From: Euprymna scolopes
Lineage: Eukaryota
Strand: one strand, 5' to 3'
Length of the DNA: 64,000 bases
Assembly: GCA_053919585.1 (NCBI GenBank)
Contig: CM132798.1
Part shown: piece by piece, positions 57,821 to 61,752 of the stretch
Numbering within the stretch: position 1 is the stretch's first letter
How the letters are laid out: the number at the start of each line of letters is the position of its first letter
The notes under the pieces: generated by a model
Database searches by the model: none
What the model was told of the DNA's origin: nothing
The model's input: the letters and a program-made list of their open reading frames with translations, nothing else
Translations under genes and position numbers: made by a program

Positions 57821-59152
57821 ATACTTTCAGATACTATGTGTATCTTATGACGATTATATATACATAGAATTGTTTATGTTTATGACAATCGTAATTTTAG
57901 AGTATATGTTAAAGACAATCGTAATTTTAGCGTATATGTTCAAGAGGATCTATCGAATGATTGTGTTCCACACCAGTGTGACTTCCTTATAGCTTTTTAT
58001 CCTATTTGTATGCTTGTCCCGTAACAAACAAGTACTTTAAGCAAAGGTAACCATATATGATTTACGAAATGTACTAACGCCTTGCGTATTGAATTTGAGA
58101 GTATATTGAAGAGTGGGGTTTGTAATATATCTCTCACCCGTATTCTTAATATGATCAGTTATAACACATANNNNNNNNNNNNNNNNNNNNNNNNNNNNNN
58201 NNNNNNNNNNNNNNNNNNNNNNNNNNNNNNNNNNNNNNNNNNNNNNNNNNNNNNNNNNNNNNNNNNNNNNNNNNNNNNNNNNNNNNNNNNNNNNNNNNNN
58301 NNNNNNNNNNNNNNNNNNNNNNNNNNNNNNNNNNNNNNNNNNNNNNNNNNNNTATGAGAGAATGAGAAAAAGAGAGGAGGGGAAAGAGGATTATCCCCAT
58401 AAGCCATTTCCCTTTAATAATTACAACAGAAATTCTTAACCACTAATAGCCATGGCTAATGATAAATTACCTGTAGGTACTTCATTCAAATTCCTCGTAT
58501 TAACTCTAACAAGGAACACGAATTGGAAGAGATGTATTGAGATCATTGCCTAGGTTGCTAAAAAACGTCGAACTAGAGAGACTAAGAATATCTTAGTTAT
58601 CTTATTATTAAATTACGCTCCAAATTATTATGTCTGTTATCTATATAACAATGCCTATAAAAGAAATTTTAAATGTCTTGATAAAGTGAATCCAGCAAAT
58701 AACCACCTCCCTGTCTTTCCTTTGCGGACATACGCCACACTAGATGATCTGAAAATCACCCTTTATCAGGAGTATAATATCATAAAAAACCTAGGCATCT
58801 CGAAAGCATGTAGACCCGATATTATCTAGGCTGTTCTATTTAAAAAAAAGAATGTGCCGAGGTTGCTCCAGTGCTCTCCGAACTTTACAACAAATGCCAA
58901 ATCTTGACGAATCTTGCTTTCCTAGCGGCTGGAAAACTGCTTCTGTTGTATTAGTTTTCAAGCATTCTTGCGGAAGAACTGACCCATTTAATTATCGTCC
59001 CATTTACCTCTTCCCGCTTTCCGCCAAAATATTTGAGCCCATGATTAATAAAGCTCTAGACCATCACATTACAGCTGCTAAACTTCTAACCGACAAACAA
59101 TATGGATTTAGGCAAGTCCGTTCCACAGCAGATACCCTAACTATAATCTGTG

Positions 59153-60349
59153 GGATTTATTTGCTTCCCCACTGAGCAAATTAGGCACAGGGCCGTTTTT
59201 TAATGTGGAGATAGGGGGAGGGAAAGGGGGACCAGCTCCCGAGAGGAGGGAAATGGGAGCTGGATTAGAAACTGTTGGTATGAAGTGTTGCCCTTTTCAG
59301 TGACCAAGGTCAGATATTTATTTGCTTCCCCACTGAGCAAATTAGGAACAAGGCCGTTTTTTAATGTGGAGAGAGTGGGAGGGGGGAGGGAAAGGGGGAT
59401 CCAGCTCCCGAGAGGTGGGAAATGGGAGCTGGATTAGTAACTGTGGTCTGTAGGGTGATTCCTACGTTGACCAAGTTCAGATATGTGGGGTTACGCCCAC
59501 ATATGGTCTTTGCTAGTCATAGCTAGTATTTGCTTGCAGCATCTGTCGGAACAGATGGTATTTATTTGCTCCCCCACTGAGCAAATTAGGCACAAGGCCG
59601 TTTTTAATGTGAGGTAAAAACCAGCTCCCCTTAAAGTAGGCAAAAAGGGGGCACTCTGGTTACCAAAAAAAATAATTGTCCCAGTATAGAGGGTTTCCCC
59701 TCCATTGACTGGTACAAATTATCTTAAGTGCAGCATCTGTCGGAACAGATGGTATTTATTTGCTCCCCCACTGAGCAAATTAGGCACAAGGCCGTTTTTA
59801 ATGTGAGGTAAAAACCAGCTCCCCTAAAAGTAGGCAAAAAGGGGTCACTCTGGTTACCAAAAATAATAATTGTCCCAGTATAGAGGGTTTCCCCTCCATT
59901 GACTGGTACAAATTATCTTAAGTGTAGTATCTGCCGGAACAGATGGTATTTATTTGCTCCCCCACTGAGCAAATTAGGCACAAGGCCGTTTTTAATGTGA
60001 GGTAAAAACCAGCTCCCCTAAAAGGGGTCACTGTGGTTACCAAAAATAATAATTGTCCCAGTATAGAGGGTTTCCCCTCCATTGACTGGTACAAATTATC
60101 TTAAGTGCAGTATCTGCCGGAACAGATGGTATTTATTTGCTCCCCCACTGAGCAAATTAGGCACAAGGCCGTTTTTAATGTGAGGTAAAAACCAGCTCCC
60201 CTAAAAGGGGTCACTCTGGTTACCAAAAATAATAATTGTCCCAGTATAGAGGGTTTCCCCTCCATTGACTGGTACAAATTATCTTAAGTGCAGCATCTGC
60301 CGGAACAGATACTACACTTTGATCTTGTCCCCCGTACCACGGAGGGCCC
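59153..60349 (-). mobile_element. TSD-flanked non-coding tandem array of six structured units with a U2 snRNA-derived leader
   Basis: 18-bp TSD ccctaactataatctgtg at 59135-59152 and 60350-60367. Units start (plus strand) at 59155, 59316, 59560, 59754, 59948 and 60131 and share a ~50-bp box atttatttgctYccccactgagcaaattaggMacaRggccgtttttaatgtg. Confidence 0.93.
60303..60326 (-). ncRNA. U2 snRNA fragment (about nt 23-46, branch-site recognition region); not a full gene
   Basis: Minus strand AAGATCAAAGTGTAGTATCTGTTC equals the invertebrate U2 sequence as recalled, including GUAGUA. Confidence 0.85.
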
Positions 60350-61752
60350 CCCTAACTATAATCTGTGAACGTATATACGATACACTGGACAAAGCAAGGG
60401 AGATAAGAGCGGTAGCCCTAGATGTATCTAAGGTTTTGGACAGAGTATAGCATAATGGCATTCTCAGGAAAATCAGATCATATATTATCACTGGAAGAAT
60501 ACATAACGTAATTAAATCCTTCTTTAGTAAGAGTAGAATCCAGGTTTTCCTCGGCCGTCGTACATCTAAACAATATGATATACATGCGGGAGTACCTCAG
60601 GGGCATATGCTTGGACCTTTATTATTCCTAATATTCATAAATGACACACCTGAAAAAATTGTCTCTGTAATGCGTATATTTGCTGACGACACCACGTTCT
60701 ATAACAGACAGGAGGAGAAAAAATGAACTCATATCTAAGGAAATAACAAAAATACTAGGAAAAGACCTCCAATCTCTAGTCGAATGGGGACAAAAATGGA
60801 TTGTCACATTTAATGCTGCCAAGAGTAAGCTTGCTTCCGTCAATAATTACAAGAAATATTCTCAAAAACTAATAGCAATGGCCGAAAACACATTACCTGT
60901 AAGCACTTCTTTTAACCTCCTCGGTCTAAGGTTTACAGGGAACATTAGTTCGAACATATACATTAAGAGCATTGGCAAGGCTGCTTTTAAGCAGGTAGAG
61001 TCTCTCTCTCTCTCCCTCCCTCTCCCTACCGTGCTAGAAACCTACTTACGCCTGATAGTATCCTGTACCTCTATAAGGCCACGATTCGCCTGTGTATGAA
61101 GTATTGTTGTCACATTTGGGCTGGTGAATTCGCTACCAGTCTCTCCCTCCTGGATAGTTCAAAAGAGAGTCGCCAACCTAATAGTTCCTGGACTGCCATC
61201 TAACCTTCTGTCTCTCCCCCACTGACGTAATGGTGCATCACTCTGACTGTTCAACAAGTATTTTAATGGTGAATGCTAGACTACAAGCCCTGGTACCCCG
61301 TCGACGTAAATACGTCCAACAAACAGCTAAACCCCAACCCTACACAGTAGAGACCCCTTGGTGTAAGGACCTTCTGCTGCAATGGTTTATTTCCCAGAAC
61401 TGCTAGACTTTGGAACTCATTTTCGGGATTCTGCTTTCCAAACTGTACTAACATGCAGAAGTTCAAGTGTAATGTGAAAAAACATATTGATGCTCATCTC
61501 CCTTCATAATATCCCTGCAACTTATGTCCCTGGTAGTAGCCCTCTATTTTAAGGTGGCACTGTTCCTTGTTTGGGGTTAAAATTGAATTTTAAAAAATTG
61601 GTGCTGCGTCTAACACACCTTGATTTATCATAACGTAAAGCCTAACAATCAGCCCTCGAAACTGCTACAGAAAAAAAAGTACCTTTAAATTATATTTAGA
61701 TAAGTAAACCCAAACTTTTAAGCAAATTTACTTGTTAATAAGACCATGGTTA

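What the first reader, a model, noticed from the sequence alone, without database searches (positions are those of the whole stretch)
59135..60367. Mobile non-coding tandem array inserted as one 1197-bp block with a perfect 18-bp TSD
Seen: the LINE RT frame reads RSTADTLTIIC, stops, and resumes ERIYDTLDK after 1197 bp. ccctaactataatctgtg is duplicated exactly on both sides. The insert has six units (161, 244, 194, 194, 183, ~180 bp) that share a constant ~50-bp box, with two distinct body types (A: units 1-2; B: units 3-6). It has no ORF, TIR, LTR or poly(A). Known: TSDs of this length are typical of target-primed reverse transcription by LINE machinery. Inference: a multimeric structured RNA was reverse-transcribed and inserted, as with metazoan retrozymes, but I found no hammerhead core in it, so it may be a different class of RNA element.
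Basis: partly seen in the sequence, partly recalled or inferred. Interest (0 to 1): 0.9.

Follow-up and report, generated by a model that had tools for sequence, protein, structure and literature searches.

The report
Self-homing U2-headed SINE array
The 1.2-kb insert is a tandem array of a very abundant mollusc retroposon that starts with a U2 snRNA-derived leader and is moved by LINEs that home into U2 sequence, so it is a LINE-dependent SINE array, not a ribozyme-based element.

Summary
An exact 18-bp duplication (59135-59152, 60350-60367) flanks a 1197-bp non-coding insert of six units that splits a LINE reverse-transcriptase frame. Three paralogous LINE copies show the empty site.

The retrozyme reading does not hold. 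No ribozyme family matches. The element lies on the minus strand. Its 5' end (60349-60303) is a U2 snRNA-derived head, and head letters 23-47 are identical to this genome's U2. Each unit ends in a stem-loop tail that shares a 17-nt core with the 3' UTR of one APE+RT LINE family (L083); the sibling family (L084) carries a diverged version. Both LINE families sit inside the 764-bp U2 gene array behind the same U2 leader.

The family is huge, with at least 19,024 head/unit and 33,756 unit/unit junctions. Monomers of about 221-234 bp have 15-22-bp TSDs. The LINEs also insert into SINE heads and into each other's heads.

All junction classes lie beside an ATC in U2-like sequence. I read the array as a SINEU-like retroposon whose head is a portable homing site, so arrays probably grow by repeated self-insertion. 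One-block insertion is not excluded.

This scan had already found the family elsewhere in the genome.

The parts
59135..59152 (.). Target-site duplication, left copy. It abuts the 3' end of the minus-strand element.
   Evidence: Exact 18-nt repeat. Single copy in paralogous host LINEs.
59153..59313 (-). Unit A1, the 3'-most unit. It is an A-type unit truncated at its 5' side at an internal ATCTGA motif. It ends in the 3' tail ...GCAAATAAATCC.
   Evidence: best relative elsewhere 94%. The A2/A1 junction is unique in the genome.
59314..59557 (-). Unit A2, a full A-type unit (244 nt).
   Evidence: best relative elsewhere 96%.
59558..59751 (-). Unit B1 (194 nt).
   Evidence: 2 mismatches to a copy elsewhere, 6 to its neighbour B2.
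59752..59945 (-). Unit B2 (194 nt).
   Evidence: identical copies on other chromosomes.
59946..60128 (-). Unit B3 (183-nt variant).
60129..60302 (-). Unit B4 body (183-nt variant), joined directly to the head.
   Evidence: identical copies elsewhere.
60303..60349 (-). U2 snRNA-derived head, the 5' end of the element. It is a 5' hairpin followed by AAGATCAAAGTGTAGTATCTGTTC, the branch-point-recognition region of this genome's U2.
   Evidence: Weak Rfam U2 alignment. Exact 22-mer. Head letters 23-47 are 100% identical to the U2 genes and to the LINE leaders. The same head variant occurs in at least 40 other copies.
60286..60319 (-). 14-bp hairpin that pairs the U2 branch-point-recognition segment of the head with an antisense segment at the start of the unit. 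Two pairs are G-U on the minus strand and C-A mismatches on the plus strand.
   Evidence: Sequence. Folds: minus strand -90.2 kcal/mol, z -6.4; plus strand -66.7 kcal/mol, z -3.3.
60350..60367 (.). Target-site duplication, right copy. It abuts the 5' head.
58852..59134 (+). Host LINE reverse-transcriptase fragment upstream of the insert.
   Evidence: RVT_1 profile 7-54. Frame.
60368..60720 (+). Host LINE reverse-transcriptase fragment downstream of the insert. This copy is decayed and has stop codons.
   Evidence: RVT_1 profile 85-164. Frame.

Best explanation
The insert is a minus-strand, non-coding, LINE-dependent retroposon of the SINEU type. It has a 47-nt head derived from the 5' end of U2 snRNA, then six tandem units. 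Each unit ends in a conserved 3' module (GGCCTTGTGCC hairpin, a second stem-loop, then AAATAAATAC).

Its likely drivers are young L1/Tx1-like APE+RT LINEs that home into U2 sequence. In the U2 gene array these LINEs sit behind U2 letters 1-47. They carry that leader with them when they move. One family (L083) has the 17-nt tail core and the AAATAAATA end in its 3' UTR. The sibling family (L084) has a diverged version of both.

Shown here: the first insertion at this site was target-primed reverse transcription, with an 18-bp TSD and an empty site in paralogues.

Inferred: the head is a portable copy of the LINE's own target. The endonuclease nicks beside an ATC in AAG^ATCAAAGTGTAGT^ATCTGTTC and again 15-22 bp downstream. 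New copies therefore land in resident heads, and homology hides the 5' join. Arrays then grow head-proximally, unit by unit. Here, older A units lie distal to the head and young B units lie next to it.

The head itself was probably captured by transcription from the U2 promoter of an element sitting in a U2 gene.
For: Head:
- Head letters 23-47 are identical to this genome's U2, including its extra A.
- Other subfamilies keep U2 letters 7-47.

Strand:
- G-U pairs occur only on the minus strand.
- Fold z is -6.4 for the minus strand against -3.3 for the plus strand.

Family:
- There are 19,024 exact head/unit and 33,756 exact unit/unit junctions.
- Monomers of 221-234 bp and arrays have TSDs of 15-22 bp at unrelated sites.

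Partner LINEs:
- Two-ORF LINEs interrupt the 764-bp U2 array. They carry Exo_endo_phos, RVT_1 and zf-RVT domains.
- The best solved relative is human L1 ORF2p at E 4e-71, against 2e-20 for R2.
- Both 5' junctions follow U2 letter 47.
- The 17-nt tail core is shared with L083. The tail hairpin covaries across SINE subfamilies.
- At least 40 LINE copies are 98-100% identical and lie on many chromosomes.

Self-homing shown directly for the LINE:
- LINE-LINE tandems are separated only by U2 letters about 25-47 (L093, L094, L100).
- One LINE sits inside the head of a C-type SINE that keeps its own outer TSD (L095/L096).
- One LINE sits inside the head of an A-type SINE of this family (L097/L098).

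Site logic:
- Junctions fall at U2 letter 1 (ATCGC), 26 (ATCAAAG) and 39 (ATCTG).
- 7 of 15 de novo TSDs start (C)ATC. I expect about 0.5 by chance, binomial about 1e-7.
- The unit/unit site is within 1 nt of the site reported for Keno and Utopia (PMC4640811).

Units:
- Each B unit is closer to copies elsewhere (0-2 mismatches) than to its neighbour (2-6). The A units are 94-96%.
Against: - No LINE with a tail identical to the A/B units was found. The shared part is a 17-nt core plus the terminal AAATAAATA, so the exact partner family is inferred.
- The window's own target site does not start with ATC.
- Stepwise growth at this locus is not shown. A single-event concatemer would look the same.
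- Unit order in other arrays is not strictly polar; B and A interleave.
- Transcription is unresolved. PolyA RNA-seq shows reads on both strands, 92% of them running into unlike sequence, with no discrete ends.
- LINE clade membership (Tx1/Keno) was not tested by phylogeny.
Confidence: 0.8

Rival explanations
1. One-event block. A multimeric cDNA was made in a single target-primed reverse transcription and inserted with the 18-bp TSD. It came either from a transcript of a pre-existing genomic array or by template jumping of the reverse transcriptase from unit RNA to unit RNA.
For: One perfect TSD flanks the whole array. Several loci share the head-proximal order H-b-b... with different 3' extents, as expected if reverse transcription starts at internal tails of long array transcripts. 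RNA-seq reads span unit/unit joints.
Against: The A2/A1 junction exists nowhere else in the genome at up to 1 mismatch, so no surviving master or daughter array carries it. The colinear array in L044 is only 91.6% identical overall, while single B units are 99-100% identical to copies elsewhere. Template jumps would have to occur at the same ATC-adjacent positions that the endonuclease site preference explains by itself. Old A and young B units would have to be co-templated.
Confidence: 0.3
2. Retrozyme-like element. The units encode a self-cleaving RNA that circularises and is copied by rolling-circle reverse transcription.
For: Tandem units of 160-250 nt, strong predicted structure, and LINE-type TSD.
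Against: No hammerhead, twister, HDV-like, hatchet, pistol or other ribozyme family matches at E<=10 on either strand. Arrays have a unique 5' head and a defined 3' end, which a rolling circle does not give. Monomers with head and TSD are common. Backward joints are present in DNA contigs too.
Confidence: 0.03
3. A single SINE monomer inserted and was later expanded in place by unequal crossing-over or replication slippage (ordinary satellite growth).
For: Very long mixed arrays with higher-order patterns exist elsewhere, for example on contig 34. These probably did expand this way.
Against: In this array each unit has a closer relative on another chromosome than next door. Four distinct variants (A-truncated, A, B-194, B-183) are present.
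Confidence: 0.08
4. Assembly artefact.
For: Tandem repeats are prone to collapse or chimeric joins. No single contig of the DNA runs spans the stretch.
Against: The TSD, the exact resumption of the RT frame, and the canonical head and tail ends at the two junctions are what a real insertion gives. The same architecture recurs at many loci.
Confidence: 0.02

Closest known systems
SINEU (U1/U2 snRNA-headed SINEs of crocodilians; Kojima 2015, PMC4494074)
   Same: Short non-coding retroposon whose 5' head comes from U2 snRNA. It has oligo-T runs that argue against Pol III and no recognisable internal promoter. It is mobilised by L1-superfamily LINEs related to the U2-targeting Keno group. Tandem copies arise by sequential insertion at one site.
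   Different: A different animal phylum (mollusc by run labels), and presumably an independent origin. Here the autonomous LINEs still sit in U2 genes and carry the same U2 leader, which suggests capture by co-transcription rather than template switch. The head keeps the homing site. Headless unit arrays (33,756 junctions) are the dominant form.
Keno (APE, Tx1 clade) and Utopia (RLE): U2 gene-targeting LINEs (Kojima and Jurka 2015, PMC4640811)
   Same: LINEs inserted in U2 snRNA genes in the U2 orientation. There are tens-of-bp TSDs, as in reptile Utopia, and occasional tandem insertion. The unit/unit junction of the SINE (followed by (A)TCTGTTC) is within 1 nt of the reported 3' flank start at U2 letter 39.
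   Different: The two LINE families read here join at U2 letters about 25 and 1, not 39. They have an APE, not an RLE, so they are not Utopia. Tx1/Keno clade membership was not tested. The specificity is relaxed, with many dispersed copies.
Metazoan retrozymes (tandem repeats with type I hammerheads that give circular RNAs). From my own knowledge; no paper was read here.
   Same: Non-coding tandem units of a few hundred nt, highly structured, dependent on LINE machinery.
   Different: No ribozyme, a polar head-to-tail architecture, and SINE-like monomers.
Non-autonomous derivatives of target-specific LINEs that are co-transcribed with their target (R2 and its internally deleted derivatives). 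From my own knowledge; R2 co-transcription is cited in PMC4494074.
   Same: The 5' flank of the target gene is part of the transcript and can guide precise 5' joining. The 3' UTR structure is what the reverse transcriptase recognises.
   Different: Here the captured target fragment travels with the element to new loci and itself becomes a target.
snRNA/L1 chimeric retrocopies made by template switch (U6-L1 type; discussed in PMC4494074)
   Same: An snRNA 5' part fused to a LINE-mobilised sequence.
   Different: The junction after U2 letter 46/47 is fixed in at least 19,024 copies and in the LINEs. It is therefore inherited, not made anew each time.

Membership tests
SINEU-type retroposon | 5' head derived from U1 or U2 snRNA | tested here: met
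   Head letters 23-47 are 100% identical to this genome's U2 genes. Sister subfamilies keep U2 letters 7-47.
SINEU-type retroposon | Short, non-coding, dispersed, flanked by TSDs | tested here: met
   Monomers are 221-234 bp with TSDs of 15-22 bp at unrelated sites. The window TSD is 18 bp with an empty paralogous site.
SINEU-type retroposon | 3' tail shared with an autonomous LINE | tested here: inconclusive
   The 17-nt core and the terminal AAATAAATA are shared with the L083 LINE 3' UTR. L084 has a diverged core and ends in TAAATAC. No LINE with the full A/B tail was found.
SINEU-type retroposon | Common descent with crocodilian SINEU-1/2/3 | not tested
   No crocodilian sequences were available. 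An independent origin is likely.
Keno/Tx1 U2-targeting LINE (the partner) | APE endonuclease plus RT, two ORFs | tested here: met
   Pfam Exo_endo_phos, RVT_1 and zf-RVT; ORF1 has a zf-CCHC domain. The nearest solved relative is L1 ORF2p.
Keno/Tx1 U2-targeting LINE (the partner) | Inserted in U2 snRNA genes | tested here: met
   L083 and L084 interrupt the 764-bp U2 array.
Keno/Tx1 U2-targeting LINE (the partner) | 3' flank starts at U2 letter 39 | tested here: not met
   L083 joins at about letter 25 and L084 at letter 1. Only the SINE unit/unit junction is at letter 38/39.
Keno/Tx1 U2-targeting LINE (the partner) | RT groups inside the Tx1 clade | not tested
   No reference RT set was at hand.
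Utopia | Restriction-like endonuclease, single ORF | tested here: not met
   APE domain and two ORFs.
Retrozyme | Hammerhead ribozyme in each repeat | tested here: not met
   cmscan of 58900-60600 on both strands at E<=10 gives no ribozyme family.
Retrozyme | Circular monomer RNA | not testable with these tools
   Only polyA and single-cell raw-read RNA runs were on offer. Backward joints also occur in DNA contigs.

The most novel reading that the evidence does not exclude
The U2-derived head is a portable homing site. It was captured when a U2-resident LINE or its deletion derivative was transcribed from the U2 promoter, and it now attracts further insertions of both the LINE and the SINE. 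This would make the system a self-seeding generator of tandem arrays, that is SINE-to-satellite conversion by iterated site-specific retrotransposition. It would also give a concrete answer to how snRNA heads are acquired, in an animal where the elements are still active. A more remote extension: array transcripts, each unit carrying a segment complementary to the U2 branch-point-recognition sequence, might titrate or mimic U2 snRNA.
Probability: 0.45. Interest if true: 0.72.

Novelty: new variant of a known kind. Interest (0 to 1): 0.58.

Why it matters
snRNA-headed SINEs were described only from crocodilians. There, their origin (template switch) and their transcription remained open questions (PMC4494074).

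Here the same kind of element occurs in a mollusc at tens of thousands of copies. It sits alongside intact, near-identical LINEs that live in the U2 gene array and carry the same leader. This points to capture of the head from the target gene.

It also shows a mechanism by which a mobile element carries its own landing site and builds tandem arrays. That links SINEs, site-specific LINEs and the birth of satellite DNA.

Because the copies are 99-100% identical and the ORFs are open, the model can be tested at the bench. For annotation, it warns that thousands of 'U2' hits and 183/194/244-bp 'satellites' in this genome are one retroposon family.

Tried and rejected
- Ribozyme or retrozyme: Rfam at E<=10 gave only noise, plus the weak U2 alignment that turned out to be the lead.
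- The Rfam U2 family search of the whole genome failed twice. It was replaced by pattern searches. The U2 core pattern mostly hit other U2-headed SINE subfamilies, not genes.
- Search for a LINE with the exact A/B tail: the pattern hits preceded by G, A or T instead of C were all SINE variants in the four I read.
- RNA-seq: polyA libraries show abundant reads on both strands that mostly run on into other sequence, with no discrete starts or ends. They show neither a promoter nor the strand.
- Test for a shared master array: L044 has the same unit order but is only 91.6% identical.
- A 290-bp AT-rich module with a TATA-like box lies about 30 nt upstream of the leader at six loci. It could be a promoter-bearing source or merely a favoured target. 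This is undecided.
- Literature searches found no U2-headed SINE reported from molluscs or cephalopods in the held library. Repbase and Dfam could not be checked.
- Local-duplication origin of the array was rejected on unit identities.
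Full report
**Observation**

The 18-nt string CCCTAACTATAATCTGTG occurs exactly at 59135-59152 and 60350-60367 and cannot be extended. Between the two copies lie 1197 bp made of six units with start-to-start spacings of 161, 244, 194, 194 and 183. All six share a 50-70-nt box. They fall into two body types, A (two units) and B (four units).

The flanks are one reverse-transcriptase frame...RSTADTLTIIC | ERIYDTLDK.... The left flank matches Pfam RVT_1 at profile positions 7-54 and the right flank at 85-164. 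Three paralogous copies of this host LINE (87-88% identical) have a single copy of the target and run straight on. The insertion and its TSD are therefore real.

**Which strand, and what the ends are**

A permissive Rfam scan found no ribozyme. It gave one weak alignment of the right end, on the minus strand, to U2 snRNA.

This genome's true U2 genes form a tandem array of 764-bp repeats on contig 9, with about 1,190 pattern hits. Their sequence has an extra A in GATCAAAG. Letters 23-47 of the element's minus-strand 5' end are 100% identical to it. Other copies and subfamilies keep U2 letters 7-47, including stem-loop I. The window's subfamily has replaced the first 22 letters with another 7-bp hairpin.

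The minus strand is the RNA sense, on two grounds:
- A 14-bp hairpin pairs the U2 branch-point-recognition segment with the start of the unit. Two of its pairs are G-U on the minus strand and would be C-A on the plus strand.
- The head-plus-one-unit RNA folds at -90.2 kcal/mol (z -6.4) on the minus strand, against -66.7 (z -3.3) on the plus strand.

Read this way, the element is: head (60349-60303), then B-183, B-183, B-194, B-194, A-244, then a 5'-truncated A-161. It ends in ...GCAAATAAATCC at the left TSD.

**The family**

- The exact head/unit junction occurs 19,024 times and the exact unit/unit junction 33,756 times.
- Monomers (head plus one unit, 221-234 bp) and arrays of many lengths sit at unrelated sites with TSDs of 15-22 bp. 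This is a SINE-like retroposon.
- T5 runs inside the units argue against Pol III transcription.
- It corresponds in kind to SINEU, the U1/U2-headed SINEs known from crocodilians (PMC4494074). Sequential tandem insertions were noted for SINEU too.

**The partner**

The U2 array is interrupted by LINEs about 7.6 kb long with two open ORFs (880/1145 aa and 766/1149 aa). They form two families that are 74% identical. ORF2 has Exo_endo_phos, RVT_1 and zf-RVT domains. Its nearest solved relative is human L1 ORF2p (E 4e-71, against 2e-20 for R2).

Both families start right after U2 letter 47. This is essentially the same junction as in the SINE, which ends its head at letter 46.

The L083 3' UTR contains the SINE tail core GGCCTTGTGCCTAATTT and ends in AAATAAATA. 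L084 has a diverged core and ends in TAAATAC. Across SINE subfamilies the first tail hairpin covaries (GGC/GCC against GAC/GUC).

The L083 LINE has at least 40 copies that are 98-100% identical on many chromosomes, several of them in head-to-tail pairs about 7.6 kb apart.

**Homing into heads**

I read the junctions directly:
- Tandem LINEs are separated only by AGATCAAAGTGTAGTATCTGTTCT, which is U2 letters about 25-47.
- One dispersed LINE lies inside the head of a C-type SINE that keeps its own outer TSD.
- Another lies inside the head of an A-type SINE of this very family.

So the LINE machinery treats the U2-derived head as a target wherever that head sits, and makes a duplication of about 22 bp (letters 26-47).

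For the SINE, the same junction class (tail | ATCAAAGTG...) is present and abundant in DNA and RNA reads. The commonest class is tail | ATCTGTTC. That lies within 1 nt of the site reported for Keno and Utopia (PMC4640811).

The L084 LINE joins at U2 letter 1 (ATCGC). Seven of 15 de novo TSDs begin (C)ATC, where I expect about 0.5 by chance (binomial about 1e-7). The truncated A1 unit starts at an internal ATCTGA.

One rule therefore fits every junction class: a nick beside ATC, then a second nick 15-22 bp downstream.

**How this array arose**

Each B unit is nearer to copies on other chromosomes (0-2 mismatches) than to its neighbour (2-6 mismatches). The A units are 94-96% identical to their best relatives. 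Local duplication is therefore unlikely.

The A2/A1 junction is unique in the genome, so no surviving master array was copied.

Two readings remain:
- Stepwise homing into the resident head, which I favour. It explains the site logic, the young-near-head order, and the huge excess of unit/unit junctions, given that 19,000 heads outnumber about 1,200 U2 genes.
- A concatemer made in one event.

The shared H-b-b prefixes at several loci and the single perfect TSD keep the second reading alive. Unit order elsewhere is not strictly polar.

**Expression and distribution**

PolyA RNA-seq of the same species label holds many reads of the family on both strands. Most run on into other sequence, and there are no discrete ends. 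The source promoter is therefore unknown.

DNA contigs of a second species label also hold the family. Run labels point to a mollusc. The karyotype-like contig count and the 5.9-Gb size suggest a decapodiform cephalopod, but I did not verify that.

**Standing**

The scan had already noted this family elsewhere in the genome, and a follow-up there tied it to U2-homing LINEs. I reached the same conclusion independently.

For this finding I add that the tandem array is part of the same system, and that LINE-in-head and LINE-LINE junctions show the homing directly.

I found no report of U2-headed SINEs outside crocodilians in the held literature. Repbase and Dfam were not searchable.

Noticed in passing
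G000 contig 9, about 168.86-168.97 Mb (loci L076-L085): The functional U2 snRNA genes form a 764-bp tandem array with about 1,190 pattern hits. It is interrupted at several places by 7-8-kb gaps. The two gaps I read are full-length LINEs of two families.
   Followed up: partly
L048, L054, L058, L061, L064, L065 (upstream of head-to-tail SINE arrays): A conserved AT-rich module of about 290 bp ends in ...GGTATAAAAAAAGCGAAACTCGACTCTAATCACAG. Its TATA-like box lies about 30 nt before the ACAG leader with which many dispersed copies start. It is either a promoter-bearing source locus that is itself repeated, or a favoured target in another repeat.
   Followed up: partly
L055/L056 (G000 contig 36, about 93.527 Mb): Three elements of different length (232, 440 and 490 bp) sit in one target. 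Each is preceded by the same 20-nt TSD plus a 16-nt leader. This matches the 'tandem insertions sandwiching a TSD' described for crocodilian SINEU-3.
   Followed up: partly
L031-L042: At least three further U2-headed subfamilies (C, D, E bodies) exist. They share the same layout: head, an antisense-to-U2 segment, a GNRA-like hairpin, and a tail ending in TAAATAGGTAC or AAATAAATAC. Three of them pass Rfam's U2 gathering score and would be mis-annotated as U2 genes.
   Followed up: partly
G000 contig 1, 30311074-30313900: Eleven complete head+unit elements lie at an exact 281-bp period. This is a satellite-like array made of whole SINEs.
   Followed up: no
window 62442-62915 (minus strand): A 157-aa ORF has a PD...D...EK-like motif (KPDIVIW...LIIDVTVP...EKITKY). 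It looks like the restriction-like endonuclease end of another retroelement.
   Followed up: no
window about 55.9 kb, 58.15-58.35 kb and 63.4-63.6 kb: Runs of N (masked or gaps) lie close to the finding.
   Followed up: no
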